Part shown: positions 2,696-35,543 of the stretch, piece by piece
How the letters are laid out: each line of letters begins with the position of its first letter
Position numbering within the stretch: position 1 is the stretch's first letter
Notes under the pieces: generated by a model
Databases searched by the model: none
The model's input: only the letters and a program-made list of their open reading frames with translations
What the model was told of the DNA's origin: nothing
Source of the DNA: Hemiscyllium ocellatum
Lineage: Eukaryota
NCBI RefSeq assembly: GCF_020745735.1
Contig: NC_083409.1
Span: forward strand, 19,612,341 to 19,676,340
DNA length: 64,000 nucleotides
Reading direction: 5' to 3'
Made by a program: the position numbers and the translations under genes

Positions 2696-3066
2696 TCCTC
2701 CTGTGCTGTCAGTTTCCAGGGAGTGCAGACAGTTCACAGTTTTCTCCCGTCTCAGTAACAAACGTCCAGCTGCTCTGAGCTCCTTCTTTCACTTCCTCTG
2801 TTGGTGAAGTTTCAACCTTGTGATCTGACAGCCTTTGCAGTTATTTTTTACACTGGGGCTTTCTGTTGTGGTCAGAATCTCTAATAATAAGTGCCCAATC
2901 AGTGACAATCACAGCAGCTAAGAGCTGTCAGGACTGAGGAGCCAGGCTCACTGGGAAACACATTGGGAAGATCAAAGCCATCCCCTTCAGCTCCTGGTAC
3001 AAGCTCCATCCCTCTCCCTGAGCACTGTCTGCTGCTCAACCAGACTCTTTACAACTTTGGCCTCAT
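2696..3066. repeat. Segmental duplication, copy 1; inverted partner at 21240-21610
   Basis: The reverse complement of 21240-21610 aligns with few mismatches, across both unique sequence and an adjoining L2 fragment. Confidence 0.9.
2767..2890 (-). promoter_or_regulatory. Candidate B-cell enhancer module, copy 1: E-box CAGCTG (2767-2772), Ets-IRF composite GAGGAAGTGAAA (minus strand, 2787-2798), MEF2-type CTAATAATAA (2881-2890)
   Basis: Motifs read directly from the sequence; all three are conserved in the second copy. Function is inferred. Confidence 0.45.

Positions 3067-7737: not shown

Positions 7738-7738
<1 letters not shown>

Positions 7739-7775
<37 letters not shown>
7739..7775. repeat. 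(CT)n microsatellite
   Basis: Uninterrupted ct repeat. Confidence 0.95.
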
Positions 7776-7777
<2 letters not shown>

Positions 7778-8329
7778 CCTGTGCTCCATCTCTTGCTCTC
7801 TAAGCTGTATCCCTCCCTCCATTTCAGCTGCTGGGAGTTCGATCTGAGCCAATGCCAGTGAATCCCATGGAGAATAATGACGGGATATTTGGAGTGTGAG
7901 TTTGATGATGTAAATGTGAACCATTGCAGCAAAGACATTACAGATGGTTTGTACGACAGCAAAGCCCAAACCAGAGCATTGTGTCAATCAACACAGAACT
8001 TAAAAAAGCTTCAATAAAAACAATTATTAATGTGACTCTCAGAGGTATCATTATTCTAGTTACAAATGGCTATTTCTCAGTGAAGGTCCATCCTGCTGAA
8101 TATTAGATACAGCTGGGCTTTGAAGAAATATTGGGCAGATGGAGTGTAATGTGGGGGAGTGTGACCTTGTTCACTTTCACAATAATCATTCAAATGTGCC
8201 TGGAGAGTTGTTAGGTCCACACAGCAAAACTTGCCATTGGGTATAATCCATTAAGTGTGATAAATACAGAAACTCGCTTAGTTCTAGTTGTCAGTGAGTT
8301 CTTGTCAACATTCTTTTAACAAATCAATT

Positions 8330-11165
8330 TTATACAAGAATGATATACAACAAACCCTCTCTATACAACCTTCTCAGCTGGGAATAGGGAATGAATCTGG
8401 TTTTGTGACGAGACCACATTCCTCGAGTCTACACAGAATTAAATTGAACAGTTTGGTTCAGGAGCCAATACTACAGGAGAACGCCAATTACTCTGATATG
8501 GTTCAATCAGCTGATTCTCCAACATGGAAGCCCTCTGTTCCATCGCCGGTTTCGGTTGGTTTTTGTTTTATTTTGTCTGAATTACCAAATTCATGTTATA
8601 TTTGATTCATGTGGTAGATCTAAGTGTATCAATACAAGTCCACAAGATAAAGGAGCAGAATTGGGCCATTTGGCCCATCATGTCTGATCATTTACAGTTG
8701 ATAATGTTTCTCAGCTCCAATCTCTTCCCTTTTCCCTGTAAATCTTGATCCCTTGACCAATCAAGAGCCAATCTATCTCTTTGTTAAATACACTCAATGA
8801 ATTGGCCTCCAAGGCCATCTGCAGTTCCACAGATTAATGACAATCTGGCTGAAGAAATTCCTTCTCAACCCAATTCGAAAGATCGTCTCTTCACTCTGAG
8901 TCTGTGCCCTCGGGTCTCCTACTCTCCAATTATTAGAAACATCTCCTCCATGTCCACTCTATCCAGGCCACCCTGTATTCTGTAAGTTTCAATGACATTC
9001 CCTCTCATCTTTCTAAACTCCATCAAGTACAGAACCAAAGTCCTCAAAGACTCCTCATACAAACACCTTTGTATTGTCTGAGCAGCCTCACTAAATCTAC
9101 CTGTTGATCTTTCTCCAGATTCAAAAATACAGCGTCTGAAGTCTCAAATATCTCTGAATTTGTTCATGTAATAACAGGAAGTTACTTTGGGAAGTGTCCA
9201 GGTCTTTTTTGATCTCAAGCTTTTTCTGATCCCCTCCTCTATTATACTCTCTACTTGACAAACCTGTACATGATGGGATGGTTCCTCAAAAACTGGGAGA
9301 GGAATTAAGGATGCTGGTTTTGTATTGAGGTTTACCTATAACTTGACAAGTAAGACACGCTTTATAAAACTGCACCACATCTTTAACCAATTGTGGCTCA
9401 GTAAAGTACCTGTTTCTGGATGCCTGTGTTTTCCAAATCCCCCTGTGAACTGCCATGGGAGTCTCATGTGCCCCTTGTACTATCTCCCTATGATAGCTGG
9501 GTGGGACCACTAGGCAATGTCTAACCGACCATTCTTCATCTGGGGGTCTATGAGGGGGTCTCCACTTCCTCATCAGCGCTCCATTCTGAACACAATAACA
9601 CTCTGAAATTCCTTCGGCCTCGACCTCAGTATGAGCTGACTGTGCTCATTTATTTCATTCAGGATCTGCTTTTTGGATCTGCTGCAATTAATGACATCAT
9701 ACCAACCACTCCACCTGGATTATCTTCACCCTTTCGGAAAGTTTCAGCGATCCTTTCACTTGCTGTGGTGTCACATCAACCCTTATTGATGGATTTTGTT
9801 TAACCATTGCCCTGGTTACCTCACACGAAGGAGAGAGACCAGGAACCTGTTCCTGTCATTGTTCTGTTTCTTGGCCCTCCTTTGGACATTCTGTAATTAT
9901 CGGGGAAGCTACTGCCTTTAGTCCTGACAAACCATTCCCCAGAAGGAAATCGACTCCTTCAACAGGGAATGTTTTCCCATTCCAACAATTACTTCTCCTG
10001 ATAACAAATCACATTCCAGTTGTACTGTATACAATGGAAGTGGAATATATTTTCCACCAATCCCATTGATTAATACCTTAGCTACCATTGAGCTCTCTGG
10101 AGGGAAAATCAACTCTTTCACCAGTAAAAGGGACTGTGTTGCTCCTGTATCTCTCAGTTTGGTTCTGGGTTTAGCTGAAGAAAAAGGCGTCACCATTCCT
10201 TTTGATAAAAGTCCTGTCCACCTCTCATCTACCTGACAACCTCCTTTACTAATGACAGAATTCACCTCCAGCCTTTTTGTTATAGTTACAGCTACAACCT
10301 GCTCTGTGGGATTATCTGTTTGGGTTGCCCTCTCTGACTCATTTTTACGAACTCCCATAAATCCCATGGGTTTACCTCACAACTTCTAACATTCCAAACA
10401 TACATGGCCCACCTTATTCCAAGAGAAAAATTTCAGCTTCTGATCATCACTTCCACCCTCACCAATTTCCTTCTTCATCTGAGGAGGAGTTCTTGGGCTG
10501 TTCCCTCCTGTCCATTCTCTCCCCTGGCTATCTACCTTCCTTAGACTCTCCCAATTTTTATTTTTCTCCCATTTCTGGGCCTGATGGGAAAAAGGTTTCT
10601 GGATCGGTCTCCCATCAGGTGACTTCCCCACCTCCTGATGCTGCTTGGCTTGTTGTGCTCTTCCTGCCTCCTGTTTGTCTACTTTGGATTCCAGCATCTG
10701 CAGGGTTTTGGTTTTAACAAAGTCTACAATCATTAGCCATTATAGCTGCTTGTCTTACTGTCGTTCCCCTTTGGTCATCTACATGAATTCTGATTCTAGA
10801 AGGGAAGGAAGTTCTTCTCAAAGGATAACTTCTCTGAGAGCATTGTAAGTATTCTCAGCTGTTAATGCCCTTATCCACCTGTCAACATTATTTTGTTAAA
10901 CTCTCTTAAACTCAGTAGAGATTTTTCCAGGCTGTTGTGTAAGTTCTGAAACATCTCTCTGTAATGTTTCTGGAGCCAACTCATATGTGCTTAGAATAGA
11001 CATTTTCACCTCCTCATGATTCCGAAAATATTCCTCTGACAGGGATGTAGAAACCTCTTGTGCTTCCCAAGTTCATTTTTGCATGGGCAAGGTCCAACCT
11101 GTTTTTCCCACCTCCCTGATGTTGCTATCTTCTGAAACAACATGAAAAATGCTTCCATATCCTTC
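8330..11165 (-). mobile_element. Decayed Gypsy LTR retrotransposon, Gmr1-type order: gag, protease, integrase, RT
   Basis: Gag remnant at ~10730-11160 (ILSTYELAPE, DRWIRAL). Degenerate zinc knuckle (KVGHVCLEC). Protease LRDTGATQSL (ORF 9918-10367). Integrase zinc-binding region AHETPMAVHRG...KACLTCQVIGKP (ORF 9286-9573). RT start MLENQLIEPYQSNWRSPVVLAPEP..FCVDSR at 8525 downward. Confidence 0.8.
8630..9060 (-). mobile_element. CR1 3' fragment inserted into the Gypsy remnant
   Basis: Same CR1 3' sequence as 30060-30480 (tcagaattcccttctc.../ctgaggctgtgccctc type motifs). Confidence 0.75.
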
Positions 11166-13670
11166 TCTTCATAGTCATAGAGTCATACAGCAAACAATCA
11201 GGCCCTTCTGTTTGTCGACATGTCGATGCCAATCAGTCATCACCAAACTCCATTTACCTGCACTTGGTCCATAGCCTTCCATGCACTGGCATTTTATGTG
11301 CTCATCTGGATGTTTCTTAAATGTTGTGAGAGGAGCTTCCTCCACCACCTTCTCAAACAGCACATTCCATATTTCTACCATCCTCTGGAGAAAACAAGTC
11401 CTCAAAACCCCTCTAAATCACTTTTTCATACGGTATGCTTATTGCCTCTGGTCATAGACATGTCTGACATGGGGAAAAGATTCTCACAATTGACTTTGTC
11501 TATGCCTTTCATATTTTTGTATACCTCAACCGGATTCCCCCCAGAGAAAACAAACCCAGTCTATCCAGTCTCTCCTCATAACGAAAATTTTCCATCCCAG
11601 GGAACATTCTGGTTAATCTCCTCTGCATCCTCTCCAGTCCAATCACGTTCTTCCAACAGTGTCACGACCAGAAATGTGCACAATATTCCAGACATGACCT
11701 AACCAGTGCTCTGTCAGGTAACAACACAAATTTCTACTTCCTATATTTTACACTCTGGCTAATGATGGCAATCATCCCATATGCCTTCTTCACCACCCTG
11801 TCTAGCTGTGCTGATACCTTCCAGGATTGATGGACTTGTACACCAAGGTCCCTTTGTTCCTCAGTACTCCCAAGGAACATAAGAACATAAGAACTAGGAG
11901 CAGGAGTAGTCCAAGTGTCCCTTCAACCCTGCTCTGCCATTCAATAAGATCATGGCTGATCTTTTCATGGACTCGGCTCCACATAAGACCATAAGACAAA
12001 GGAGTGGAAGTAAGGCCATTTGGTCCATCGAGTCCACTCCGCCATTCAATCATGGGTGATGGGCATTTATCGACAGTTACCTACACTCTCCCTGTAGCCC
12101 TTAATTCATTGCAAGATTTAGAATTTATCAATCTCTGCCTTGAAGACATTTAATATTTCAGATGCCACTGCGCTCTGTGGCAATGAATTCTTAAGGCCCA
12201 TCACTCTCTAGCTGAAAAGTCTCCTCAGTTCTGTTTTAAACTGACCCTCTCTAACTCTAAGGCTCTGCCCACGGGTCCTAGTACCCCCACCTAATGGAAA
12301 CAATTTCTCAGCATCCACCCTTTCTAAGCCATGCATTATCTTGTAAGTTTCTATTAGATCTCCCCTTCTACACTGGAATGAATACAATCCCAGGATTTTC
12401 AGCCGTTCATCATATATTAGGCTTACCATTCCAGGGATCATCCATGTGAATCTCCACTGGACACGGTCCAGTGTCAATATGTCCTTCCTGAGGTGTGGGA
12501 CTGGACTAAATGGGGCCTAACCAGAGCATTATAAAGTCTCAGTAGCACATCTCATTTTACATTCCAACCCTCTTGATATAAATTAGGAGAAAGTGAGGAC
12601 TGCAGATGCTGGAGATCAGAGCTGAAAAATGTGTTGCTGGAAAAGTGCAGCAGGTCAAGCAGCATCCAAGGAGCAGGAGAATTGGTGTTTCAGGCATAAG
12701 CCCTTCTTCATTCCTGCTCCGCTTTTCCAGCAAAACATTTTTCAGCTCTTGAGATAAATGACAACATTACATTTGCTTTCTTAACCACAGATTCAACCTG
12801 CAAGTTAACCTTTAGAGAATCCAGGACTAGCATTCCTAGATCACTTTGTATTTTGGCTTTATGAATTTTCTCACCGTCTAGAAAATTGTCCATGCCTGTA
12901 TTCTTTTTTCTAAAGTTGAAGACCTGGCATTTCCTCTCACTGTATCTCTTAATTCCTTTATTGCTAAAGAAAATCTGTCTTAGCTTTAAAACATTTACTG
13001 GAGTAGCATCAATTTCTTCATTGAGCAAGGAATTTCATAGATTTATGACCCTCTGGGTAAGAGGTTCCTTCTCAATTCAGTCCTAAATCTGCTCCCCCTA
13101 ATTTTGAGGTTCAACCCTCTTGTTTTAGTTCCACCTGCCAGTGGGAACATCCTCTCTCCTTCTGTCTTATCTATTTTCTTTATAATTTTATTTGTTTCTA
13201 TAAGATTCCCCTCATTCTCCTAAGTTCCAATGAATATATCCCAGTCTACACAGTCTCCCTTCATAAGCCAACCCCCTCCACCTCAGAATTAGCCTCGTGA
13301 ACTTTCTCTGCAGGCCTCTAGTGCTGGTATTGCCTTTTTCAAGTAAGGAGATCATTACTGCATGCAGTGCTCCAGGTGTGGTCTCACCAACACCCTGTAC
13401 AGCGGCAACATAACCTTCCTGCTTTTTAAAATCAATCTCTTTAGCAATGAAGGACAAAATTCCATTTGCCTTCCTAATTGCTTGTTGTACCTGTAGACCA
13501 ACCCTCTGTGATTCATGCATAAGGACACTCAAGGCACATGCCTTTCATTGTGTATATCCTTCCCTTATTAGGCCTCCCAAATCGATCACCTCAGAGGTGT
13601 CAGGATTAAATTACATCAGCCATTGCTCTGCCCAATTTACCAGCTGACCAATATCAGACTGTAGCCTGAG
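11165..13670 (-). mobile_element. Stack of nested 5'-truncated CR1 fragments
   Basis: C-terminal RT ORFs at 12208-12477 and 13212-13532 (LERVQRRFT-like, RRLRGDLIE). Several 3' tails (catagagtcata, cataagaacataag, cataagaccataag). Confidence 0.85.
12585..12725 (-). mobile_element. Penelope-like terminal fragment
   Basis: Same ctgctggaaaag..cagcaggtca.gcagcatcc.aggagcaggag motif as 13912-14006 and 48545-48640. Confidence 0.65.
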
Positions 13671-13679
13671 ACCCAGTAA

Positions 13680-14340
13680 TCCAAGATGGCAGCAGAGTAG
13701 GACACTTCAGACTGAGTTCATCTGCTCCGTCTGTTTCCTTTTCTTCTTTCTATTCCACTTCTCTTTTCCTTTACTTTTGTCCTTCTCCCTTATTTCTTCT
13801 CCCGGGCACGGACTCCCAGCCTCAGTCGCCTGGCCTCTGACCCAGTGCAGACCTAATGATGTGGCCTCTTGGCTTGGTTTGGCAGTGTCCTGGCCTGGCA
13901 GGGAGACCTTCCAGAGCTGAAAAATGTGTTGCTGGAAAAGCGCAGTAGATCAGACAGCATCCAAGGAGCAGGAGAGTCGGCATTTCGGGCATGAGCCCTT
14001 CTTCAGGGATACCTTCCAGCCCAATGGGGCAGACTCTTGGTCCAACATGATGGCCTCTCAGTTTGATGTGGTGGCCTCTCAGCCCAGCTAAGTTCTTAAG
14101 AAACGCTATAATACTTGAACTTCCAGCTTTATTTCTTCATTTTCTACTTAAAACTAAACAGATCTGCAACGTGTAACTTTGAACTTTATTCTTTCTTCCT
14201 ACCTTGTTCTTACGATTCTGTACTGAGGTCCTTGTACCTAAGATGGCACCTTGTGAGGTGGCGTTACATACTTTTCACTGTACTCCAATACTTTTGCACT
14301 CGAATACACGTGACAATAAACTAAAATAAAAATCAAATCA
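13680..14340 (+). mobile_element. Probable non-autonomous element with an L2-like 3' tail, interrupted by a Penelope-like fragment
   Basis: Starts aagatggcagcag and ends cttttcactgtac...acacgtgacaataaactaaaataaaaatcaaatcaa. Family assignment is tentative. Confidence 0.4.
13975..14010 (-). ncRNA. Minimal type-I hammerhead ribozyme motif, probably inactive
   Basis: Minus strand reads CTGAAGA-A-GGGC-tcat-GCCC-GAAA-tgcc-gact: core and stem II intact, but the cleavage triplet is GCC rather than NUH. Confidence 0.55.
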
Positions 14341-14559
14341 ATATCAATAACACCACCAATTTATGTGGCCTCTGAAAAACCTTCGATTTATACAATCACA
14401 GTCAATTTGTTAATGTACATTATAAACAGCAAGGGTCCCAGCCCCAATCCCTGTCTTACACCACTGGTCACAGGTTTCCAATCACAAAGACAACCCTCCA
14501 CCATCACTCTTTGCCTCATATTTGGATCCAATTTGCCAAAATGCCTTGGATCCAATGGG

Positions 14560-16510
14560 CTCTTACAATAACTCCAGGAAAGGCAAGAGAGGTAGGCAAG
14601 TAGTGCAGGAGTCTTCTGTGGCTATTCCCATTTCAAACAAGTATGCTGTTTTGGAAAATGTAGGGGGTGATGGAAACTCAGGGGTACTTAGCATGAGCAG
14701 CCAAGTTTCTGGTATTGACACTGGCTCTAATGTAATGGGAGGTATGTTGGGTTCCAAACAATCGACTGTGTTAGGGGACTCTCTAGCCCGAGGTACTGAC
14801 AGACATTTCTGTGACCAGCAGTGAAAAATCAGAATGGTGTTTTGCTTTCCTGGTGCCAGGATCAAGGATGTCCCCGTGAGGGTGCAGAATGTTCTTAAGG
14901 TGGAGAGGGACCAGCAGGAGGTCATTGTACACTTTGGAACCAACAACAGTGCTTAGCACTGCTGCCTCACAGCGCCAGAGACCTGGGTTCAATTCCCGAC
15001 TCAGGCGACTGACTGTGTGGAGTTTGTACGTTCTCCCCGTGTCTGCGTGGGTTTCCTCCGGGTGTTCCGGTTTCCTCCCACAGTTTAAAGATGTGCGGGT
15101 CAGGTGAATTGGCCATGCCAAATTGCCCGTAGTGTTAGGTAAGGGGTAAATGTAGGGGTATGGGTGGGTTGCGCTTCGGCGGGTCGGTGTGGACTTGTTG
15201 GGCCAAAGGGCCTGTTTCCACAATGTAAGTAATCTAATCTAATCTAAACATAGTAAGGGAAAAGGTTGAGATTCTGAAGGGATATTGCAGAGAGTTAGGC
15301 AGGAATTTAAAAAGGAGGTCCTCAAGAGTAGTCATATCTGAATTACTCCTGGTGCTATGAGCCAGTGAGGGCAGGAATAGGAGGATAGAGCAGATGAATG
15401 CATGGCTGAGGAGCTGGTGTATGGGAGAAGGATTCACATTTTTGGATCTTTGGAAGCTGTTTTGAGGTAGCAGTGACCTGTACAAAAAGGACAGATTGCA
15501 CCTAAATTGGAAGGGGACTAATATACTGGCAGGGAGATTTGCTAGAGCTGCTCGGGAGGATTTAACCTAGTAAGGTGGGCGGGTGGGACCCAGGGAGATA
15601 GTGAGGAAAGATTTCAACCTCAGATTGGTAAAGTTGAGAACAAAGACAAGTCAAACAGTCAGGGCAGGCGAGGACAAAGCAGAGAACAAGGTAAGACTGA
15701 TAAATTAAACTGCATTTATTTCAATGCAAGAGGCCTAACAGGGAAGGAAGATGAACATAGGGCGTGGTTAGGAACATGGGACTGGGATATCATAGCAATT
15801 ATAGAAATATGGCTCAGGGATGGACTGGACTGGCGGTTTAATGTTCTAGGATACAAATGCTACAGGAAGGACAGAAAGGGAGGCACAAGAGGAGGGAGAG
15901 TGGCATTTTTGATAAGGGATAGCATGACAGCTGTACTTAGAGAGGATATTCCCAGAAGTACATCTAGGGAAGTTATATGAATGGAACTGAGAAGAAAGAA
16001 GGGGATAATCACCCTGTTGGGATTATATTATAGCCCCCCTCCAGTAGTCAATGGGAAATTGAGAAATTTGTAAGGAGATTTCAGTTATCAGTAAGAATAA
16101 TGGGGTCGTTATAGTAGGGGATGTTAACCTTCCAAATATAGACCGGGACTGCCATTGTGTTAAGGGTTTAGATGGAGAGGAATTTGTTAAGTGCGTACAA
16201 GACAATTTTCTGATTCAGTATGTGGATGTACCTACTAGAGAAGGTGCAAAGTTCGACTACTCTTGGAAATAAGGCAGGGCAGGTGACTGAGGAGTCAGTG
16301 GAGGACCACTTTTGGTCAGCGACCATAATTCTATTCATTTTAAAATAGTGATGGAAAAGGATAGACCAGATCCAGAAGTTGAAGTTCTAAATTGGAGGAA
16401 GGCTAATTTTGCCAGTATCAGGCAAGAGCTCTGAAAAGCTGATTGGGGGCAGTTGCTCGCAGGTAAAGGGACAGCTGGAAAATGGGAAACCTTCAGAAAT
16501 GAGATAACTT
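14560..16510 (+). mobile_element. CR1 LINE: ORF1 SGNH-esterase region and ORF2 endonuclease, with a SINE insertion
   Basis: VLGDSLARGTDRHFC and VCCFPGARIKDV-like esterase motifs, followed by endonuclease motifs (YFNARGL, IVGDVNLP). Confidence 0.85.
14947..15246 (+). mobile_element. Young HE1-type SINE, slightly 5'-truncated
   Basis: tRNA-like head with B-box ggttcaattcc, retained CpGs, (taatc)n tail, flanked by aaca (14945-14948) and aaca (15247-15250). Confidence 0.9.
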
Positions 16511-16865
16511 AGAACATAGAACATAGAACAATACAGCACAGAACAGGCCCTTCGGCCCACGATGTTGTGCCGAACATCTATCCTAGATTAAGCACCCATC
16601 CATGTACCTATCAAATTGCCGCTTAAAGGTCACCAGTGATTCTGACTCTACCACTCCCACGGGCAGCGCATTCCATGCCCCCAAAACTCTCTGGGTAAAG
16701 AACACACCCCTGACATCTCCCCTATAACTTCCACCCTTCACCTTAAATTTATGTCCACTTGTAACACTCCATTGTACCCAGGGGAAAAGTTTCTGACTGT
16801 CTACTCTATCTATTCCTCTGATCATCTTATAAATCTCTATCAAGTCACCCCTCATCCTTCGCCGT
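16510..16865 (-). mobile_element. CR1 3' end
   Basis: ORF 16583-16960: RRRMRGDLIEIYKMIRGIDRVD...FFTQRVLGAWNALP. Confidence 0.85.
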
Positions 16866-19800
16866 GGATATGGTTTATTTGGACTTTGTAAGGAGAGTAG
16901 ATTGGCGGTTCTGTGGTCAAAAACAAGACTCACGAATAGCATGTTGCCTCCCAGTTGCACGGGTCAGGGATGTCTCAGATCAGCTGCAAGACATTCTGAA
17001 GGGGGAGGTGAACAGCTAGCTGTGATGGTTCATGTAGGCACCGATGATATCGGTAATAAATGGAATGAGGTCCTACAAACAGAATCTAGGGAGTTAGGAA
17101 CCACATTAAAATGTAGGATCTCAGAGGTAGTAATCTCAGGATTGCTCCCAGTGCCATGTGCTAGTCAGAGTCGAAATGAAAATATAGGCAGGATGAATGC
17201 GTGGCTTGAGAGATGGTGCAGGAGGGAGGGGTTCAGATTTTTGGGACATTGCGACTGGTTCCTGGGGAGGTGGGACAATTACAAATCGAGCCGTCTACAC
17301 CTGGGCAGGACTGGAACAAGTGTCCTGTGGGATGTGTTTGATCACACTCTTGGGGAGGGTTCAAAATAGTGTAGCAGAGGGATGGGAACCAAATGAGGAG
17401 GTTAGTGGGCAATAAGGAGGGAGTAACTAAAGCCTGTCAGGAACTAGATATTGAAGTCAGCGTGACTAAGGCTAAGAGTAGGTAGGGAGCAGATGATGAA
17501 TGCAAAGGGACAGATGATCTGAGGTGCATTTGTTTTAATGTGAGAAGTGTAGTAGGTAAGGCAGAGGAATTTAAGGCTTGGACTATTATCTGGGAGTATG
17601 ATGTTATTACTATTACTGAGACTTGGTTGAGGGAATGGCAAGATTGTTAACTAAATATCTCAGGATACAGATGTATCTGATGGGTTCGAGAGGGAGTTAA
17701 AATGGATGGAGGAGTTGCATTACAGGTCAGAGAGGATAGAGAGGATATCACACGTGTGCTGAAGGAGGGCACTATGGAGGACTCGAGCAGTGGGGCAATA
17801 TGGGCAGAGCTCAGAAACAGGAAGGGTGCAGTAACAATGTTGGTGCTATCCTACAAGCCTCCTAACAGTGAACGTGGGCTAGAGGTACAAGTATGTAATC
17901 AGATTATGGAAAGATGTAGGAGTAACAAGGTGGTGATGATGGAAGATTTTAATATTCCCAACATTGACTGGGATTCACTTCATGTTAGAAGTTAAGATGG
18001 AGCAGAATTTGTAAGGAGCATCCAGGAGGATTTTACAGAGTAATGTGGAAATAGTCTAACTCAGGAAGGGGCCATACTGGACTGGTGCTGGGAATGAGTC
18101 CGGCCAGGTGGTTGAAATTTCAGTCAGGGATTACTTTGGTAACACTGACCACAATTCCATAAGTTTTAGAATGCTCATGGACAAATATGAGAGTGGTCCT
18201 CAAGGAAGAGGGCTAAAGTGGAGGAAGGCCAACTATAGCAAAATTTGGCAGGAGCTGGGGAATGTGGATTGGGAGCAGCTGTTTAAAGGGAAATCCACAT
18301 TTGATATGTGGGAGGCTTTTAAAGAAAGGTTGACTAGAGTCAGGACAGACATGTCTCTGTGAAAATAAGGGATTGAAATGGCAGGATTAGGAAACGCTGG
18401 ATGACAGATGAAATTGTGAGACTAGCTAAGAGGAAAAAGGATGCATACGTAAGGTCTAGGTAGCTGAAAACAGACAAAGCTTTAGAAGAATATCGTGAAA
18501 GTAGAACCAATCTGAAGTGAGGAATTAAAAGGGCAAAAAGAGGTCACAAAATATCATTTACAAACAGGATTAAGGAAAATCCCAAATCCTTTTATTCATA
18601 TATAAGTAGCAAGAGGGTGACTAGAGAAAGGGTTGGTCCACTCAAGGACAAAGGAGGAATGTTATGTGTGGAGTCAGACAAAATGGATGAGATTCTTAAT
18701 GAGTGCTTTACATCGGTATTCACCAAGGAGAGGGAAATGACAGATGTTGAAGTTGGGGATAGGTGTTTGATTACTCAGGGTGAGGTCGGCTTACGGAGGG
18801 AGGAAGTGTTGGGTATTTTAAAAGGCATCAAGGTACACAAGTCCCCAGGCCGGGATGGGATCGATCCCAGCTTACTGAGGAAAGCAAGAGAGGAAATAGC
18901 TGGGATCCTTAATCGATATATTTGTAGCAACCTTGAACATGGATGAGGTCCCAGATGACTGGAGAATTGCTAATGTTTAAGAAGGGTAGCCAGGATAATC
19001 CAGGCAAATATCAACCAGTGAGCCTGATGTAGTGGTAGGGAAGCTGCTGGAGAAGATACTGAGGGATAAGATCTATTTACATTTGGAAGAAAATTGACTT
19101 ATCAGTTATAGGGAGCATGAAGTTGTGCAGGGAATGTCATGTCTTACCAACTTTATAGAATCTTTTGAAGAAGAGATGAAGTTGATTGATGAGGGAAGGG
19201 CTGTGGGTGTCATATACATGGATTTCAGGAATGCATTTGATAAAGTTCACCATGGTAGCCTGATGAAGAAATTAAAGTCACATGGGGTACAAAGTGTACT
19301 CACTAGATGGAGATAGAACAGGCTGGGCAACAGAAGACAGACAGTAGTAGTGGAAGGAGTTTCTCAAAATGGAGAACAGGAATCCGTGCTGGTACCACTC
19401 TTGCTTTGGAAAGACATCAATGATCTGGAGGAAGGTATAGGTGATCTGATTAGCAAGTTTCCAGATGACACTAATATTGGTGGAGTAGCAGATAGTGAAG
19501 GGGACTATCAGAGAATGTAGCAGAATATAGAATATAGACAGATTGGAGAGTTGGGCAGAGAAACGGACGGATGGAGTTCAAACCAGGCAAATGCGATCTG
19601 ATGAATTTTGGAAGATCCAAATCTGGAGTAAACTGTACGGTGAATGGAACACCCTGGGAAAATTGATGCCCAGAGAGACCTGGGTGTTCAGGTCCATTGT
19701 ACCCTGGAGGTGACAACACAGGTCGACAGAGTGGTCAAGAAGGCATATGGCATACCTTCCTTCACCAGACGTGGTATTCAGTACAAGAATTGAAAGGTCA

Positions 19801-20352
19801 TATTAGAATTATATCAGCCTTTGGCTTGGCCACATTTGGAATACTGCGTACAGTTCTGGTTGCCACATTACCAGAAAGATGTGGATGCTTTGGAGAGGGT
19901 GCAGAGGAGTTTCACCAGAATTGCCTGGTATGGAGGGCACTAGCTATGAAGAGAGGCTTAGTAGATTAGGATTATTCTCATTAGAAAGTCGAACATTGAG
20001 GGGGGACCTGATTGGGGTCTACAAAATCATGAGAGGTATAGACAGGATGGATAGCAAGAAGCTTTTTCCCAGAGTGGGGGACTCAATTGCTCTGGGTCAT
20101 GAGTTCAAAGTGAGAGTGGAAACATTGAAAGGAGATATGCGTGGAAAGTTCTTCACACAGAGAGTGATTGGTCCTGGAACACGTTGCCAGTGGAGGTGGT
20201 AGAGGCAGGCACAATAGCATCATTCAAGATATATCTAGATAGATACATGGATGGACAGAGAGCAAAGGGAGATAGACCCTTGTAAAATTGATGACAGATT
20301 TAGATGGAGGATATGGACCAGTGCAGGCTAGTAGGGCCGAAGGGCCAGTTCT
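16866..20352 (+). mobile_element. Long decayed CR1 LINE (ORF1 esterase end, endonuclease, RT, 3' tail)
   Basis: Collinear ORF remnants at 16902, 17702, 18108, 18617, 19125 (VIYMDFRNAFDKVHH) and 19879. Interrupted by multiple stops. Confidence 0.9.
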
Positions 20353-20399
20353 TGTGCTGTAATTTTCATTGCTCTTTGTTCTTTGAACTGAGGAAGCTC

Positions 20400-21240
20400 T
20401 AAGGAACAGAGTGATCTTGGGGTGCTTCTCCACTGATCCCTGAATATGGCAAGACAGGTTAACAGAGCAGTTATGAAGGCATAGGGGACACTTGCCTTTG
20501 TCATGTCAGGTATCGGTTTTAAAAGCAGGAGGATATGCTGCAGTTAAGTAGAACATTGGTGAGGCCACAGCTGGAGTACTGTGTGCAGTTCAGGTCACCA
20601 CACTGTAGGAAAGATGTGATTGCACTGGATGGGGCGCAGAGGGGAATCACCAGATGTTGTGTGGGATGGAAACTCTCAGTGATGAAGAGAAATTGGATCA
20701 GCTCGGGTTGTTTTCTTCAGAGCAGAGAAGGTGGAGGGGGACCTGATCGAGGTGTATACGGTTATGAGGGGAATGGACAGGGAGGAGAGAAAGCAGCTGT
20801 TCTCCTTCTTGGGAGGGTCAATAACAAGTTGGCTCACATTCAATGTCAAAGATAGGAGGTTTCAAGATGTTTTGAGGAAAGTGTTTTTTACCCAGAGGGT
20901 GGTGGGGGTCTGGAATGCACAGCCTGGGAAAGTAGTTGAGGTGGGAAACCTCACAAACTTTAAAAAGTACTTGGTGGTGAACAGTTGAAATATCATAACA
21001 TTCAAGCTATGGGCCACATGTTGGAAACTGGGATGGTATAGTTTTAGTGTAGTTTGGCTGGTACACAGTTAATGGGCTGAAGGGCCTCTTCTACACTGTG
21101 TGATTTTATGATTCTGTTGTGTGCAGTTTTGGTTTCCTTATCTGAGGAAGGATGTTCTGGCTGTGGAGGGAGGACAGCGAAGGTTTACCAGACTGATTCC
21201 TGGGAGGACAGCATTTAGATCTGATGAGAAACTGGATTGG
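20400..21240 (+). mobile_element. CR1 3' fragments
   Basis: ORFs 20535 and 20731: LVRPQLEYCVQF, GDLIEVY, FFTQRVVGVWN. Confidence 0.85.
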
Positions 21241-21610
21241 TGAGGCCAAGTTTGTAAAGAGTCTGGCTGAGCAGCAGACAGTGCTCAGGGAGAGGGATGG
21301 AGTTTGTACCAGGATCTGAAGGGGATGGCTTTGATCTTCCCAATGTGTTTCACAGTGAGCCTGGCTCCTCAGTCCTGACTGCTCTTAGCTGCTGTGATTG
21401 TCACTGATCGGACACTTATTATTAGTGATTCTGACCACAGTAGAAAGCCCCAGTGTAAAAAATAACTGCAAAGACTGTCAGATCGCAAGGTTGAAACTTC
21501 ACCAAAAGAGGAAGTGAAAGAAGGAGCTCGGAGCAGCTGGATGTTTGTTACTGAGACGGGAGAAAACTGTGAACTGTCTGCGCTGCCTGGAATCTGACAG
21601 CACAGGAGGC
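21240..21610. repeat. Segmental duplication, copy 2; inverted partner at 2696-3066
   Basis: Reverse-complement match to 2696-3066. Confidence 0.9.
21416..21539 (+). promoter_or_regulatory. Candidate B-cell enhancer module, copy 2: MEF2-type site (21416-21425), EICE GAGGAAGTGAAA (21508-21519), E-box CAGCTG (21534-21539)
   Basis: Motifs read directly. Lies about 5.2 kb upstream of the V leader ATG. GGAAnnGAAA is the PU.1-IRF4/8 composite consensus. Confidence 0.5.
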
Positions 21611-21779
21611 TGGTTCTGGGATTTTTCTTTTCAGAAACAGCACAGTGATGGAAAAAAGGACAGTCACTCTCTCACAAACACACACGCCTGCACTCGGAGA
21701 TCAGAAACAGAATCCAGCAGCAGCTCTGTCTCCAAGCTGTGGAACCTGCACAGAATTGTTCCCTCATTCAGTTTTTAAC

Positions 21780-22285
21780 TGGCAGGATAGACCAAGCAGG
21801 GGAGGCAACACAGTAGTGTGTACAGTCGGAAGGGAGTTGTCCTGGGAATCCTCACCATTAACTATGGAATCCATGAAGCCTCATGGCAGCAGATCAAACA
21901 TGGGGAAGGAAACCTCCTGCTGATTACCACATAGCACCGCCCTCCCCTCCAACCTCAACTGAGCAGTCAGTCCTCCTCCATGTTGACCAACACTTGGAGG
22001 GAGCACTGAGGGTGGGAAGGATGCAGGATATACTCTGAGTAAGGGACTTCAAAATCCACCATCAAGAGCTTCTCAGAAGCATCACTACTGAGCAAGTTGG
22101 TCAAGTTCCACCTGATTCAGCTGCTAGACTGGACCTGGGGCAGGTGGTGAGGGAACCAACATGAGGGAAAACCATACTCACCATCACCCTCACCAATCTG
22201 CCTGCTGCTGGTGTATATGTCTATGACAGTATCAGTAAGGGTGACCACCGCACAGTCCGTGTGGAGACAAAATCCCATCTTCACA
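21780..22285 (+). mobile_element. L2-like LINE endonuclease fragment, same family as 330-1610
   Basis: Shares agggagttg.cctggga..., gagggagcactgagggtg and agtgaccacc motifs with 640-1060. Confidence 0.75.
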
Positions 22286-23199
22286 TTGAGATTGCCTTGC
22301 ATTTTGTTGGGCAAGAGATATGGGATGTCAGGAAGAACTTTTTTTAGCAGCAATTGGTAATGACTTGGAAATTAGTGCCCATTCAGGTGAGGCAGGTGAA
22401 GACACTCAGTGATTGCAATGGCAGATTGGATGGGCTCTTGATGGAAATAAACCTGCAAGGCCCTGGATGTCGAGTAGGGGAGGGGGTGGGACTGACTGGA
22501 TTGCTCCATGAAATGACAGCATTTACACACTTAGTCTCACCTTTACACAAAGACAGGGAGAAACAGACAAACCAGTTCACAGAAGTGTTTTCTCAAGCAA
22601 AACACTCTTGAACCAACTCAGAGAACACACCAGTCTAGATTTACTAGAATAAATCAGCAAATCAATGGCAAGGGAACAGCGACCCAAAAGTGTTGGAACT
22701 GAACAGTATATTCAATATCACAAACAACGAGAGAGGGAGGGATGAAGGGCAGGAAGGTAGAGAGGGTACTCTTAGGGTCTGAAGGCTCTGCTGTCAATGG
22801 TGGGATGGAGGAAGCAACAATGGGCAGGAGACCAGAGACAGAAGGTGGAAGGGGGAGGGAGGGAATGTGAGTCTACAGCAGGACACAGAGTGAGGGGGGA
22901 GGGAGGCCATGGAGGCAATTGGCTGGCAGTGAGGTCAGATTCTGGAACAACTGTAGTTGTGAGACAGGGAAGGGATCGCTCCACATCAGACAAGTTGGGG
23001 TTTATGGAATGTGGCTTCAGGAAGCTGGGAGAGGACATTGAAATCATAGAGTCAGGAGGTGGGATGAGCAGGAATTGGGGTTTCTGTGGTCAAGAGACTG
23101 AGGTAATGCAGAGACAAACAATGTTGTGCAGATTGAAATAAGGGACCTGGGTAATGGACAGGATGTGGGGTTCACAGCTCAGATACTGGACAGTCCGGT

Positions 23200-25579: not shown

Positions 25580-26470
25580 AGAGAGAAAGGTCCTGATCAC
25601 CACATTCTGGGAAGGATGTGATTGTACTTGAGAGGGGGCAGAGGAGATTTCCCAGGATGCTGCCTGGGATGGAGGGTCAGCTATGAGGAAAGACTGGAAA
25701 GGTTGGGGCTGTTTTCCTTGGAGCATTGAAGGTTGAGAGGGACCTGATAGAGAGGTATAAGATAATTGTTGGCAGTGATATGTTGCATAGGAAGGCACTT
25801 TATACAAGAGTAAAGGACTCAATAACCAGGGACAGAGATTGAAGGTAACACAGACATGGACACATTGAAACTTGGAGCAGGAGCAGGCCATTCGGCCCTT
25901 TGAATCTTATGTGTCATTCAGTATGATCATGGCTGATCCTCTCTCTCAATGCTGTGCTGCTGCTTTCTCCCCATTTCCTTCATGCTGTTAAAACGCAAAA
26001 CAACTCTTTTCTTTCTTGAATATATTCAGTTCCTTGTCCTCCACAGCTGTTTGTGGTAGAGAATTCATCAGGTTGACCATTCTCTGAGTGAAGAAATGTT
26101 TCCTCATCTCAGTCCTAAATGGTTGGCCCTGTATCCCCCTGAGCCTGTGTCCCCTCGTTCCAGACTCCCCAACCAGGGGAAACCTCCTCCCTGCCCAGCC
26201 CTGTTACAATTTTATGTGTTTCAATCAGATCCCCTCTCATCCTTCTAAACTCGAGTGAATCCAGGCCCAGTTGAGTTGCAGAGTGAGAGGAGAATTGAGG
26301 AGAAATGTTTTCACAAAGAGTGTGGTGGGAATCTGGAACTCACTGCCTGAAAGGCTGGTTGAGTCACAAACTCTCGTGACATTGGAGCAATATTTAGATA
26401 TTCCCTTGTATTGCTGTAGCCCTCAGGGTAATGGGCCATGAGCTGGAGGATGGGATTAGTGTCATCACAT
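25580..26470. mobile_element. Three short CR1 3' fragments in mixed orientation
   Basis: C-terminal RT and tail motifs (aggttgagagggacctgataga; gagcaggagcaggccattcggccc; gtggtgggaatctggaactcactgcc). Confidence 0.7.
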
Positions 26471-26560: not shown

Positions 26561-26658
26561 AGAGGAAGTTTGAGGGGTTGACGTGGCTCTCTCTGCCTGA
26601 TGCCATTTACATACTGAGGAACACCCAGTCAGACTCTCACAAACTGCAGCTTTATAAA
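26561..26658 (+). promoter_or_regulatory. V-kappa promoter: PU box AGAGGAAGT (26561), variant octamer ATTTACAT (26605-26612), TATAAA (26653-26658)
   Basis: The octamer-TATA-ATG order and spacing match Ig light-chain promoters. The octamer has one mismatch to ATTTGCAT. Confidence 0.7.
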
Positions 26659-26718
26659 GCAGAACCAAGTGAAGGGAGAGTTTATCAGGAACCAGGCACA
26701 GGGACAGGAGCACACACC

Positions 26719-26767
26719 ATGATTTCACACATCCAGCTGATCTGGCCCCTGGCATTCTGTGTTGCAG
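26719..26767 (+). CDS. IGKV: Ig kappa V leader exon (MISHIQLIWPLAFCVA-G)
   Basis: ATG, hydrophobic leader, and a phase-1 GT donor at 26768 that matches the acceptor at 26953. Confidence 0.92.
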
Positions 26768-26953
26768 GTACAAATCTCTCTCCTTCCACCTTGAATCTTT
26801 AGCTGCTCTCCATTTCACTCTAATTCCACTGACTTGTGACTGAAGGGAAAATGCTGAAAGCAGAGGAATGCTCAGTGTCTCCAACAATCTCTCATTTGAC
26901 AGGCTCTTTCTGTGACAGTTCTGACTTCACCGTGTTTCTCTCTGACCCCTCAG

Positions 26954-27252
26954 GTATCAATGGGGACATCATCATGACTCAGTCTCCCCCGGTGCTGTCA
27001 GTGGGACTGGGCCAGACCGCAAAACTCACCTGTACGGCCAGTCAATCTGTTAGCAATGAGCTTTCCTGGTACCAGCAGCGAGAAGGTCAGAAACCCTCTC
27101 TCCTGATCTATTATGCAACAAATCGATTCACAGGAGTCTCCGATCGATTCACTGGTAGTGGATCAGGGACCAGTTTCACCCTGACAATCAGCAACATTCA
27201 GAATGAGGATGTCGCTGACTATTACTGTTTGCAGGATTACAGCTCCCCTCAA
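26954..27252 (+). CDS. IGKV: Ig light-chain V exon, kappa/type III (NS4-like), open frame: [27 protein letters not shown]...[10 protein letters not shown]...[16 protein letters not shown]
   Basis: AG acceptor, both conserved Cys, WYQQ and DYYC motifs, no stops, immediately followed by an RSS. Confidence 0.97.
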
Positions 27253-27280
27253 CACAGTGACACAGAGCCATACAAAAACC
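27253..27280 (+). other. 12-bp-spacer recombination signal sequence (CACAGTG-12-ACAAAAACC)
   Basis: Perfect consensus heptamer 27253-27259 and nonamer 27272-27280. Confidence 0.98.
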
Positions 27281-27688
27281 TGAAAGCACACAGAATCACC
27301 TCCTGTACTGACACATCCACGGTTATATAAAATGCATAATAATGGACACACAGTCCCACCGCCTGAACTGTCATATCCCACAGTTAGTTCTAAATGAAAC
27401 TGAACAAATTACCCCATGCTAGGATTGTCACTGTCCACGACACACTCCAGTCCCTGTGGTGTCTCAATGCTCACTAAAGGCCGCAAGTTTCCCTCTTACA
27501 CTCCATGGCCACATGTGAAGAGCAGCTGCAAGATTTAACAACAAAAAATAAAGTGCACAACCCAGAGGCAGAGACAGAAAGACACATGAATGAGGGAAAG
27601 ACTGATAGGGGCAAAAAGAGGGTGAGAGTGATCGACAGACTGGGAGACAGGGAGAGGGTGAGAGTGACAGAGGGAAGCAGAGAGCTGA

Positions 27689-27727
27689 GGTTTTTGTACA
27701 GCCTCTGCACTGGGAGCTCTCACTGTG
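27689..27727 (-). other. 23-bp-spacer recombination signal sequence (GGTTTTTGT-23-CACTGTG on +)
   Basis: Perfect consensus nonamer 27689-27697 and heptamer 27721-27727. The V12/J23 pairing is the kappa pattern. Confidence 0.98.
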
Positions 27728-27762
27728 GCTTACGTTCGGTAAAGGAACCAAGCTCAGACTGA
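27728..27762 (+). CDS. IGKJ: Ig kappa J segment (LTFGKGTKLRL)
   Basis: FGxGT motif and a GTAAGT phase-1 donor at 27763. Confidence 0.97.
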
Positions 27763-27973
27763 GTAAGTAAAACTCAATCCTCTGTTACTAACCCTTTCAA
27801 TACTGAAACTTTCTAAATCGCAAATGCTGAATTGCTGCAGGTGTTAGTGAGGAGCTGCAGTGAATGAAATGGTTGATTGAGGAGCACTGTGTCTAACAGG
27901 GTGTCCAGCTGTATTTCAGTAGTCCTATTGCCCCCTTTAAGCAGCAAGATATAAGTCAGTAAGTTTTACTCAC

Positions 27974-28182
27974 TGTGTGGAGGAGCTCTGTCCATTTGCA
28001 GCCTGTGGTCCCATTCCTGCAGCATGGAGTGAAATCAGTGAGTAGCCTCCTGCCAGTCTCAGTGTGACGGACTCGGGCAGAGTTTGATGTGAGCTCTGGC
28101 TCCCTGTCCCAGTCTCTGATCTCACTGACCTCAGCAGCAGCAGCAGCAGCAGCAGCAGCACAGTGAGACACCGAGCTCCCAC
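27974..28182 (-). pseudogene. Possible decayed exon encoding a signal-peptide-like stretch and an Ig-like start (RCLTVLLLLLLLLLRSVRSETGTGSQSSHQTLPESVTLRL)
   Basis: Minus-strand GTGAGT donor at 27973-27968. Similar to 36940-37127 at DNA and peptide level. No in-frame ATG. Confidence 0.35.
28132..28158. repeat. (CAG)9 trinucleotide repeat
   Basis: Nine perfect CAG units; they encode poly-Leu on the minus strand. Confidence 0.95.
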
Positions 28183-35223: not shown

Positions 35224-35543
35224 GCCGTGACAACTCTCAGCCCAAGCTGACCCTGCTGCCCCCCTCCCCAGAGCAGGTCAATGTCAAGGGCACTGCCACC
35301 CTGGTGTGCCTTGCCAATCACTTCTATCCCGATGAGCTGGAGGTGCAGTGGAAGAAGGATGGTGCAGTCATTTCGGACGGGGTTCAGACCAGCAACTACC
35401 TGCGAGCTTCGGACAGCACCTACAGTGTCAGCAGCCTGCTGACCCTCTCTGGGCCTGACTGGGAGTCCAACGCTCACTACCTCACCCACGTGACCCTCCC
35501 CTCTCCCCTCAGCAAGAGCATCAGGAGATCAGAATGTGTGTAG
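35224..35543 (+). pseudogene. IGKC: Ig kappa constant exon C1: open frame, but a 9-nt in-frame deletion removes the second Ig-domain Cys (ESNAHYLTHV versus ESNARFSCALTHV)
   Basis: Phase-1 acceptor at 35223. (S)RDNSQPKLTLLPPSPEQ...LVCLANHFYP...QWKKDG...SECV*. Direct comparison with C2. Confidence 0.9.

What the first reader, a model, noticed from the sequence alone, without database searches (positions are those of the whole stretch)
21416..21539. Candidate shark Ig-kappa enhancer: PU.1-IRF composite, E-box and MEF2 site, conserved in two copies
GAGGAAGTGAAA fits the EICE consensus (GGAAnnGAAA) used by PU.1-IRF4 in mammalian kappa 3' and lambda enhancers. It sits 15 bp from CAGCTG (E2A-type) and about 85 bp from a YTAWWWWTAR MEF2 site. 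All three motifs are intact in both inverted copies, which lie in rare unique sequence within a repeat-dense region. Light-chain enhancers are poorly characterised in cartilaginous fish. Function is inferred only.
Basis: partly seen in the sequence, partly recalled or inferred. Interest (0 to 1): 0.7.

Follow-up and report, generated by a model that had tools for sequence, protein, structure and literature searches.

The report
Conserved upstream module of shark kappa genes
A roughly 160-base non-coding core, about 5 kb upstream of a shark antibody kappa light-chain gene, recurs upstream of other kappa gene clusters and is kept better than neutral DNA; it carries PU.1/IRF and E-box sites, so it is a credible but untested candidate for a B-cell enhancer.

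Summary
GAGGAAGTGAAA (21508-21519), CAGCTG (21534-21539) and TTATTATTAG (21416-21425) are present and intact in both copies of a 369-nt inverted repeat (21241-21609 and 2697-3065, 95% identical).

The block is not a generic repeat, but it is not unique either. It belongs to the kappa cluster unit. Copy 2 lies 5.2 kb upstream of a V-J-C kappa cluster. The same block lies 4.7-6.5 kb upstream of V in two Chiloscyllium punctatum clusters that I fetched. Its summed contig depth in genomic runs matches the V exon, not the LINE fragments.

Against an old paralogous cluster, only the core 21414-21570 stands out: 87% identity versus 74% in 3,625 syntenic non-coding sites (p about 1e-4), level with the V promoter.

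Across five copies the E-box is kept in 5, the PU.1/IRF composite in 4, and the MEF2-like site only in the three near-identical copies.

There is no evidence for a structured RNA, a coding exon or specific transcription.

A lymphoid enhancer is the best reading (about 0.5). Gene conversion or hitch-hiking with chance motifs remains possible. Activity is untested. This scan had already noted the same module at eight or more other kappa clusters of this genome.

The parts
21241..21609 (+). Block copy 2: a 369-nt unit of the kappa cluster repeat. Its EICE is 5.2 kb upstream of the V leader ATG.
   Evidence: Inverted repeat I1 and BLAST. 94.6% identical to C. punctatum L001:3268-3615, and 77% and 73% identical to L003:4935-5296 and L003:876-1365.
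21414..21570 (+). Conserved core of the block, the part with long-term conservation.
   Evidence: 87.0% identity (134/154) to L003a, against 74.4% in 3,625 syntenic non-coding sites (Fisher p=1.3e-4). The 5' part of the block is 70.8% identical, i.e. neutral-like.
21508..21519 (+). ETS-IRF composite element GAGGAAGTGAAA. GGAAGTGAAA is at 21510-21519, after an A-rich 5' flank.
   Evidence: Kept in 4 of 5 copies; L003b reads GGAAATGAAG. It shares GGAAGTGAAA with the mouse lambda-B PU.1 site (PMC4872103). The consensus GGAAnnGAAA is given in PMC13757776.
21534..21539 (.). E-box CAGCTG (CASSTG class), 14 nt after the EICE.
   Evidence: Invariant in 5 of 5 copies.
21416..21425 (.). MEF2-pattern match TTATTATTAG.
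   Evidence: It fits the consensus only in the three copies that are 94% or more identical, and is broken in L003a and L003b. It is the weakest of the three motifs.
21434..21451 (.). RUNX-type ACCACA (21434-21439) and a kB-like 9/10 match (reverse complement GGGGCTTTCT, 21442-21451).
   Evidence: Read. Both are kept in 4 of 5 copies. Consensus matching is from my own knowledge; binding is not tested.
2697..3065 (-). Block copy 1, inverted, with the EICE at 2787-2798, the E-box at 2767-2772 and the MEF2-like site at 2881-2890. Its own V would lie beyond the window start.
   Evidence: Its flanks (2436-3637) are collinear with L001:2451-4164. The block is 95.1% identical, against 80-86% in the flanks (p=8e-11).
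26605..26768 (+). V-kappa promoter (octamer variant ATTTACAT at 26605-26612, TATAAA at 26653-26658) and leader exon (26719-26768).
   Evidence: The leader-to-V splice joint 26764>26951 is seen in RNA contigs of run X34.
26955..27281 (+). V-kappa exon (to 27253) and its 12-spacer RSS (CACAGTG at 27254-27260, ACAAAAACC at 27273-27281).
   Evidence: 90% identical to a C. punctatum V protein.
27690..27765 (+). J-kappa with its 23-spacer RSS (GGTTTTTGT ... CACTGTG) and J coding sequence (..TFGKGTKLRLS).
35224..35543 (+). C-kappa exon of the cluster. The frame is open, but the F-strand cysteine is missing.
   Evidence: It reads ..NAHYLTHV.., against ..NAHFSCALTHV.. in P0046, P0044 and P0053.

Best explanation
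The 369-nt block is part of the repeating unit of shark Ig-kappa (NS4 / type III) V-J-C clusters, a few kb upstream of V and in the same orientation as V.

Its roughly 157-nt core (21414-21570) is most likely a lymphoid cis-regulatory module, an enhancer. A PU.1/Spi-B-type ETS factor would recruit an IRF4/8-type partner on GAGGAAGTGAAA. An E protein would bind CAGCTG 14 nt away, and RUNX- and kB-like sites lie 5' of them. Together they would open the cluster for V-J joining and for transcription in B cells, and perhaps for hypermutation.

Shown here: the position, the recurrence at other clusters and in other sharks, and conservation above the neutral level. Inferred: which factors bind, and any enhancer activity.

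The sharp 369-nt boundaries and the 95% identity among a subset of copies probably reflect TE insertion breakpoints, gene conversion or both, rather than the limits of the functional element.
For: 1. Linkage. Copy 2 is 5.2 kb upstream of a complete V (12-RSS), J (23-RSS), C cluster. The same block lies upstream of V in C. punctatum L001 (3268-3615, V at 10001) and L003 (4935-5296, VJ at 10001), with the intervening pieces syntenic. A second, inverted block in L003 mirrors the window's head-to-head pair.

2. Not a dispersed TE. In run X5 the summed contig depth of the block is 9.8-12.6k. That compares with 7.4-8.5k for the V exon, 1.2-3k for adjacent intervening DNA and 100-425k for LINE pieces. 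Run X25 shows the same ranking.

3. Constraint.
- The core is 87.0% identical to the old paralogue, against 74.4% at neutral syntenic sites (p=1.3e-4) and 85% for the promoter.
- Copy 1 versus L001 is 95.1% in the block, against 80-86% in both flanks (p=8e-11).
- The block's 31-mers are held as well by organisms B and C as by A (0.44-0.63), whereas for the surrounding 6 kb their share falls to about 0.6 of A's.
- Contigs 94% identical to the block occur in organisms D and E.

4. Motifs. The E-box is kept in 5 of 5 copies, the EICE in 4 of 5 and RUNX in 4 of 5.

5. Literature.
- The EICE/E-box/MEF2/NF-kB set defines bird and mammal light-chain enhancers, and mutating it kills their activity (PMC3972084).
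- PU.1-family genes exist in a skate (Anderson 2001, as listed in PMC5192425).
Against: - No functional data of any kind.
- The core is not uniquely conserved. The promoter, the leader intron, an intron island at 27922-28120 and a 3'-of-C island score the same.
- Against the second divergent copy, L003b, the excess is weak (80.9% versus 75.5%, p=0.09), and that copy has lost the IRF half-site, the RUNX site and the MEF2-like site.
- Only five copies were compared, three of them nearly identical, so there is no power at the level of single motifs.
- RNA/DNA depth ratios of the block in two Ig-rich RNA runs equal those of other non-exonic cluster DNA, so there is no sign of enhancer RNA.
- Known Ig light-chain enhancers lie in the J-C intron or 3' of C, not upstream of V.
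- The neighbouring C exon lacks its conserved cysteine, so this particular cluster may be defective.
Confidence: 0.5

Rival explanations
1. Neutral passenger. The block is just a piece of the duplicated kappa cluster unit. Its high identity comes from recent duplication or gene conversion between clusters, and its transcription-factor motifs are chance matches without function.
For: - The whole 369 nt is about 95% identical among three copies, yet its 5' half is only 71% identical (neutral) to the old paralogue. That is the pattern expected of a conversion tract.
- The leader intron and the segment 24876-25159 are equally similar between the window and L001 (97% and 93%).
- Motif triples of this kind are expected many times in a genome of several gigabases (one search gives the per-window rates).
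- The MEF2 site is not conserved.
Against: - The core keeps 87%, against 74% neutral, in a paralogue old enough for the rest of the block to have drifted (p=1.3e-4).
- The E-box is invariant and the EICE is kept in 4 of 5 copies.
- Contigs 94% identical to the block are found in further shark species.
Confidence: 0.27
2. A conserved cis-element with a different job. Possibilities are a boundary or insulator between head-to-head clusters, a silencer, a promoter of sterile (germline) transcripts, or an element that mainly targets somatic hypermutation rather than transcription.
For: - The blocks sit as mirror-image pairs between divergently oriented clusters, in the window and in L003.
- Ig enhancer-like sequences with E-box, MEF2, NF-kB and PU.1-IRF sites target hypermutation with little effect on transcription (PMC3972084).
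- The block appears in RNA-run contigs at low depth.
Against: - I saw no convincing CTCF-type motif by eye.
- The RNA depth is no higher than expected from copy number.
- No splice joint from the block to the V leader appears among the listed joints.
- The motif set is that of lymphoid activating enhancers.
Confidence: 0.17
3. A generic dispersed repeat: a TE, SINE, MITE or solo LTR that happens to lie near kappa genes.
For: - It is a discrete 369-nt unit with sharp boundaries and unrelated flanks within the window.
- It is multi-copy in the genome.
- Its 3' end abuts a common shark TE in copy 1, L001 and L003a.
Against: - Its depth is 10-40 times lower than the LINE pieces and equal to the V exon.
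- It holds a constant position and orientation relative to V in three clusters, with syntenic flanks.
- I saw no target-site duplications, terminal repeats or tRNA-like head (my reading).
- There are only two copies in a repeat-dense 64 kb.
Confidence: 0.03
4. A gene product: a structured non-coding RNA or a small coding exon.
For: A 95-codon stop-free frame crosses the core on the minus strand in copy 2. Contigs covering the block occur in RNA runs.
Against: - No Rfam match at E<=1.
- RNAalifold gives a positive covariation term (a penalty), with 1 compensatory pair among 51.
- Frame-breaking 1-nt and 8-nt indels occur among the copies.
- The frame has no protein homologue.
Confidence: 0.03

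Closest known systems
Mammalian Ig-lambda enhancers (E-lambda 2-4 / 3-1, human Ig-lambda enhancer) and the chicken Ig-lambda enhancer cIgLE
   Same: - A composite PU.1-IRF site. The shark element contains GGAAGTGAAA, the same ten bases as the mouse lambda-B site (PMC4872103).
- An E-box downstream of it. Mammalian lambda enhancers have an extra E-box about 50 bp downstream of the PU.1 site.
- MEF2- and kB-like matches upstream, in the same 5'-to-3' order (PMC3972084).
- Compact size, about 150-200 bp.
   Different: - It lies upstream of V rather than 3' of C.
- There is one per V-J-C mini-locus instead of one per locus.
- The MEF2 and kB matches are imperfect or not conserved among the shark copies.
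- Sequence homology to the bird and mammal enhancers was not tested, and activity is unknown.
Mouse/human Ig-kappa 3' enhancer (3'E-kappa)
   Same: It belongs to the kappa isotype. An EICE bound by PU.1/IRF4 with a neighbouring E-box is its functional core (PMC13757776; PMC3972084 Fig. S5 legend).
   Different: - Its position is 3' of C-kappa.
- I recall an EICE-to-E-box spacing of about 15 nt in 3'E-kappa, similar to the 14 nt here. I could not verify this because the source paper was not held.
- No alignment was possible.
Conserved non-coding islands of the same shark clusters (V promoter, J-proximal intron island 27922-28120, 3'-of-C island 35838-35962)
   Same: They show the same level of conservation between old paralogous clusters, 85-88% in 100-nt windows. 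The intron island also has CAGCTG and TGTGGT.
   Different: Those islands occupy the positions where bony-vertebrate kappa enhancers are found. Only the upstream core carries a full EICE.

Membership tests
Ig light-chain enhancer of the EICE / E-box class | ETS-IRF composite element GGAAnnGAAA | tested here: met
   GGAAGTGAAA at 21510-21519 and in copy 1. Kept in 4 of 5 copies.
Ig light-chain enhancer of the EICE / E-box class | E-protein E-box (CASSTG) close to the EICE | tested here: met
   CAGCTG at 21534-21539, 14 nt from the EICE, invariant in 5 of 5 copies.
Ig light-chain enhancer of the EICE / E-box class | MEF2 and NF-kB sites (lambda-type enhancers) | tested here: inconclusive
   The MEF2 pattern is met only in the three near-identical copies. 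The kB-like site is a 9/10 match, kept in 4 of 5 copies.
Ig light-chain enhancer of the EICE / E-box class | Physical linkage to a light-chain gene | tested here: met
   The EICE lies 4.8-6.5 kb upstream of the V leader in the window cluster, L001 and L003.
Ig light-chain enhancer of the EICE / E-box class | Location in the J-C intron or 3' of C | tested here: not met
   The block is upstream of V. No EICE lies within 1 kb 3' of either C exon.
Ig light-chain enhancer of the EICE / E-box class | Conservation above the neutral rate | tested here: met
   Core 87.0% versus 74.4% (p=1.3e-4), and block 95.1% versus flanks 80-86% (p=8e-11). The signal is weak against L003b (p=0.09).
Ig light-chain enhancer of the EICE / E-box class | B-cell-specific enhancer activity, open chromatin and factor occupancy | not testable with these tools
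   No ATAC or ChIP run could be reached. RNA contigs show no specific transcription.
Dispersed transposable element | Copy number and distribution independent of host genes | tested here: not met
   Its depth equals the V exon and is 10-40 times below the LINE pieces. Its position is syntenic in three clusters.
Dispersed transposable element | Terminal repeats, target-site duplications, or a pol III / tRNA head | tested here: not met
   None seen at the boundaries in the five aligned copies. No Rfam or tRNA-like hit.
Structured non-coding RNA | Conserved secondary structure with covariation, or an Rfam match | tested here: not met
   no match; covariation term +1.92, with 1 of 51 pairs compensatory.

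The most novel reading that the evidence does not exclude
Each shark kappa mini-locus carries its own upstream PU.1/IRF-plus-E-protein enhancer. This would be the first antibody-gene enhancer defined in cartilaginous fish. It would show that the EICE/E-box logic of light-chain control predates the split of cartilaginous and bony vertebrates, and it would offer a handle on how one cluster among dozens is chosen for rearrangement, expression and hypermutation.
Probability: 0.4. Interest if true: 0.75.

Novelty: new variant of a known kind. Interest (0 to 1): 0.55.

Why it matters
How sharks activate one of many independent V-J-C mini-loci is an open question in comparative immunology. So is whether the enhancer grammar of mammalian and avian light-chain genes is ancestral.

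A 2016 review of fish immunoglobulins does not mention a single enhancer, and states that promoters appear only with V segments (PMC5192425).

A compact, cluster-linked, conserved module with a PU.1/IRF composite and an E-box gives a concrete 160-bp target for ATAC-seq, ChIP and reporter tests. Comparing clusters with intact and decayed cores would be a natural experiment on cluster choice.

This window adds one head-to-head pair, and it shows that only the core, not the whole block or the MEF2 site, is kept over long times.

Tried and rejected
- Generic repeat / TE was my first guess (60%). I rejected it after the read depths and the synteny in C. punctatum.
- Longer inverted duplication in the window: none was found. 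There is no collinear homology beyond the 369 nt.
- The joint 21604>25862 in run X5 looked like evidence that the block sits next to 25862 in other clusters. It is only the common TE that follows the block in copy 1, L001 and L003a.
- Rfam gave no hit, and RNAalifold gave no covariation.
- Searching the stop-free minus-strand frame as a 'protein', to fish out more copies from public assemblies, gave nothing.
- An exact-pattern scan of metagenome contigs gave nothing.
The cross-order test could therefore not be run.
- The 1992 3'E-kappa paper was not held, and the 1996 Spi-B text gave no passage. The claimed identity of spacing with 3'E-kappa rests on my memory only.
- The second C exon at 53.2 kb has no V, J or block nearby, so it gives no test of 'conserved beside other clusters'.
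- Both sequencing-run searches and the single read-laying run were used before I knew the block was cluster-linked, so no ATAC-type run was sought.

Full report
**1. What is there**

- GAGGAAGTGAAA at 21508-21519.
- CAGCTG at 21534-21539, with 14 nt between it and the composite site.
- TTATTATTAG, which fits YTAWWWWTAR, at 21416-21425.

They lie inside a 369-nt block, 21241-21609. The only other copy in the window is inverted, at 2697-3065, and is 95% identical with 20 differences, 5 of them at CpG. It has the same three motifs.

No further collinear homology joins the two copies. Both are bordered by LINE and other TE fragments.

**2. Chance**

The window holds 6 EICE-pattern, 50 CAGCTG and 6 MEF2-pattern matches. 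The triple occurs only in the block copies, and in none of 300 simulated windows.

This is still weak evidence. The two copies are one event. At 95% identity, a 28-base motif set stays intact about one time in four by chance. Many motif types could have been chosen in a genome of several gigabases. The case has to rest on position and conservation.

**3. Context**

The window carries a complete kappa (NS4 / type III) cluster:

| Feature | Coordinates |
|---|---|
| Octamer variant and TATA | 26605-26658 |
| Leader | 26719-26768 |
| V exon | 26955-27253 |
| 12-spacer RSS | to 27281 |
| 23-spacer RSS and J | 27690-27765 |
| C exon | about 35224-35543 |

The EICE is 5.2 kb upstream of the leader ATG. 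The best V matches are Chiloscyllium punctatum (90%) and Hemiscyllium ocellatum (86%) kappa chains, so the window comes from an orectolobiform shark.

**4. Generic repeat or cluster part?**

Laying contigs of two genomic runs at 80% likeness gave these summed depths in run X5:

| Region | Summed depth in X5 |
|---|---|
| Block | 9.8-12.6k |
| V exon | 7.4-8.5k |
| Intervening low-copy DNA | 1.2-3k |
| LINE pieces | 100-425k |

Run X25 ranks the regions the same way. At 21582, 17 contigs of X5 carry an A, and the depth there is 8,276. At 21625, just past the block, the depth is 119 in 3 contigs. The tool warns that summed depth is not a copy number, so I use only the ranking. The block is multi-copy at about the level of the V-kappa family, and far below TEs.

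**5. Other clusters**

Through V-kappa proteins I fetched four C. punctatum contigs of assembly GCA_003427335.1.

- L001 has the block at 3268-3615, 94.6% identical, with the EICE about 6.5 kb upstream of V.
- L003 has a block at 4935-5296 (77%), 4.7-5 kb upstream of a germline-joined VJ gene.
- L003 also has an inverted block at 876-1365 (73%). Its homology runs on through window 21610-22526.

The pieces between block and V are syntenic with the window, including old LINE fragments. Copy 1 of the window, with its flanks (2436-3637), is collinear with L001:2451-4164.

The block is therefore part of the duplicated cluster unit, in a fixed orientation relative to V. Mirror-image pairs of blocks between divergent clusters occur in both the window (18.2 kb apart, stuffed with retroelements) and L003 (3.6 kb apart).

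Earlier notes of this scan report the same module about 5 kb upstream of V at eight or more other kappa clusters of this genome. I treated them as leads, and they agree with what I found.

**6. Conservation**

Window cluster against the old paralogue L003a:

| Segment | Identity |
|---|---|
| Core 21414-21570 | 87.0% (134/154) |
| 5' part of the block | 70.8% |
| 3' tip of the block | 74.4% |
| 3,625 syntenic non-coding sites | 74.4% |
| V promoter | 85.2% |

The core exceeds the neutral sites with Fisher p=1.3e-4. Against L003b the excess is weak: 80.9% in the core versus 75.5% in the adjoining 895 aligned sites (p=0.09).

Copy 1 against L001 shows 95.1% in the block, against 79.7% upstream and 86.1% downstream (p=8e-11).

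In 100-nt windows across the whole cluster, the core (0.85) ranks with four other islands:
- the promoter;
- the leader intron;
- an island 200-350 nt downstream of J (27922-28120);
- an island 3' of C (35838-35962).

All are below the C exon (0.86-0.93).

Across species:
- The block's 31-mers are held as fully by organisms B and C as by A (0.44-0.63). For the surrounding 6 kb, B and C hold only about 0.6 of A's share.
- Contigs 94% identical to the block occur in Ig-rich RNA-type runs of organisms D and E.

My reading is that long-term constraint is confined to the roughly 157-nt core. The 95% identity and the sharp edges of the full 369 nt in a subset of copies are better explained by conversion tracts and TE insertion breakpoints.

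**7. Motifs across five copies (alignment A1)**

| Motif | Copies that keep it |
|---|---|
| CAGCTG | 5 of 5 |
| EICE | 4 of 5 (L003b reads GGAAATGAAG, which keeps the ETS core) |
| ACCACA (RUNX type) | 4 of 5 |
| kB-like (9/10 match) | 4 of 5 |
| MEF2 pattern | the 3 near-identical copies only |

Further invariant runs have no assignment: AACTGCAAA, and GTTTNTTACTGAGA followed by GAGAAAANTGTGAA. With three of the five sequences nearly identical, there is no statistical power for single motifs.

**8. Alternatives tested**

- Structured RNA: no Rfam hit and no covariation.
- Coding exon: indels break the frame, and the frame has no protein homologue.
- Specific transcription: in runs X20 and X34 the V exon reaches 10^5. 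The block reaches only 10-126. That gives an RNA/DNA ratio (about 0.01 for X34 over X5) like that of the promoter-upstream region and the LINE pieces (0.016-0.023). There is therefore no evidence for enhancer RNA or an upstream exon.

**9. Comparison with known systems**

- The shark site shares GGAAGTGAAA with the mouse lambda-B site (PMC4872103).
- Chicken, mouse and human lambda enhancers share E-box, NF-kB, MEF2 and PU.1-IRF4 sites, which are needed for activity. Mammals have an extra E-box downstream of the PU.1 site (PMC3972084).
- The shark core has the same kinds of site in a similar order. It lies upstream of V, occurs once per mini-locus, and has poorly kept MEF2 and kB matches.
- PU.1-family factors exist in cartilaginous fish (Anderson 2001, cited in PMC5192425).
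- That review of fish immunoglobulins mentions no enhancer at all.

**10. Verdict**

The 'generic repeat' refutation fails. 'Unique sequence' and the MEF2 site do not hold up.

The best explanation is a cluster-linked lymphoid enhancer core (about 0.5). The rivals are:
- a neutral or converted passenger (about 0.27);
- another regulatory role (about 0.17);
- a TE or a gene product (about 0.03 each).

It is a new variant of a known kind, it is of real interest to comparative immunology, and it is functionally untested. The same module had already been found by this scan on other DNA of this genome.

Runs of N in L004 were left as they are.

Noticed in passing
window 35224-35543: The C-kappa exon of the cluster keeps an open frame but lacks three residues, including the F-strand cysteine. 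It reads ..NAHYLTHV.., where C. punctatum, Hemiscyllium and nurse-shark kappa chains read ..NAHFSCALTHV... The cluster next to block copy 2 may therefore be defective. This agrees with scan note s1-233928.
   Followed up: partly
window 53163-53560: A second C-kappa exon, 82-91% identical to the first over 35076-36105. It has a 7-residue deletion (..VQT-------ISDSTY..) but keeps the cysteine. No V, J or upstream block was found for it in the window, so it is an orphan or decayed cluster.
   Followed up: partly
window 27910-28120 (L003:10716-10920, L001:11370-11590): A conserved island 150-350 nt downstream of J, 85-87% identical to an old paralogue against a 72% median. It has CAGCTG and TGTGGT and lies where the mammalian kappa intronic enhancer lies. 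It is a second candidate regulatory element. A (CAG)n microsatellite follows it.
   Followed up: partly
window 35838-35962: A conserved non-coding island about 300-400 nt 3' of the C exon, 85-88% identical to L003. No EICE pattern lies there.
   Followed up: no
L003:10534-10538: In this C. punctatum cluster the homology to the window's V end (27252) runs straight into the homology to J (27729). This is a germline-joined VJ kappa gene.
   Followed up: no
window 3066-21240; L003:1366-4934: Blocks occur as mirror-image pairs between divergently oriented clusters. In the window the 18.2-kb spacer is filled with LINE reverse-transcriptase and retrovirus-like ORFs (for example 9286-10733 and 16583-20855). 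In L003 the spacer is 3.6 kb.
   Followed up: partly
window 2600-2696; 25862-26270; L001:3621-3696; L003:5297-5514: A very common shark TE, starting ..GGAGCAGGCCATTCGGCCC.., abuts the 3' end of the block in copy 1, L001 and L003a. Copy 2 and L003b have other, mutually homologous DNA at that point (21610-22526). This TE explains the contig joint 21604>25862 in run X5.
   Followed up: yes
window 26764-26951: RNA contigs of run X34 (organism E) show the leader-to-V splice (it skips 186 nt, GT..AG). V-exon depth in X20 and X34 is 10^5-10^6, so both are Ig-rich, lymphoid-type samples from related sharks.
   Followed up: no
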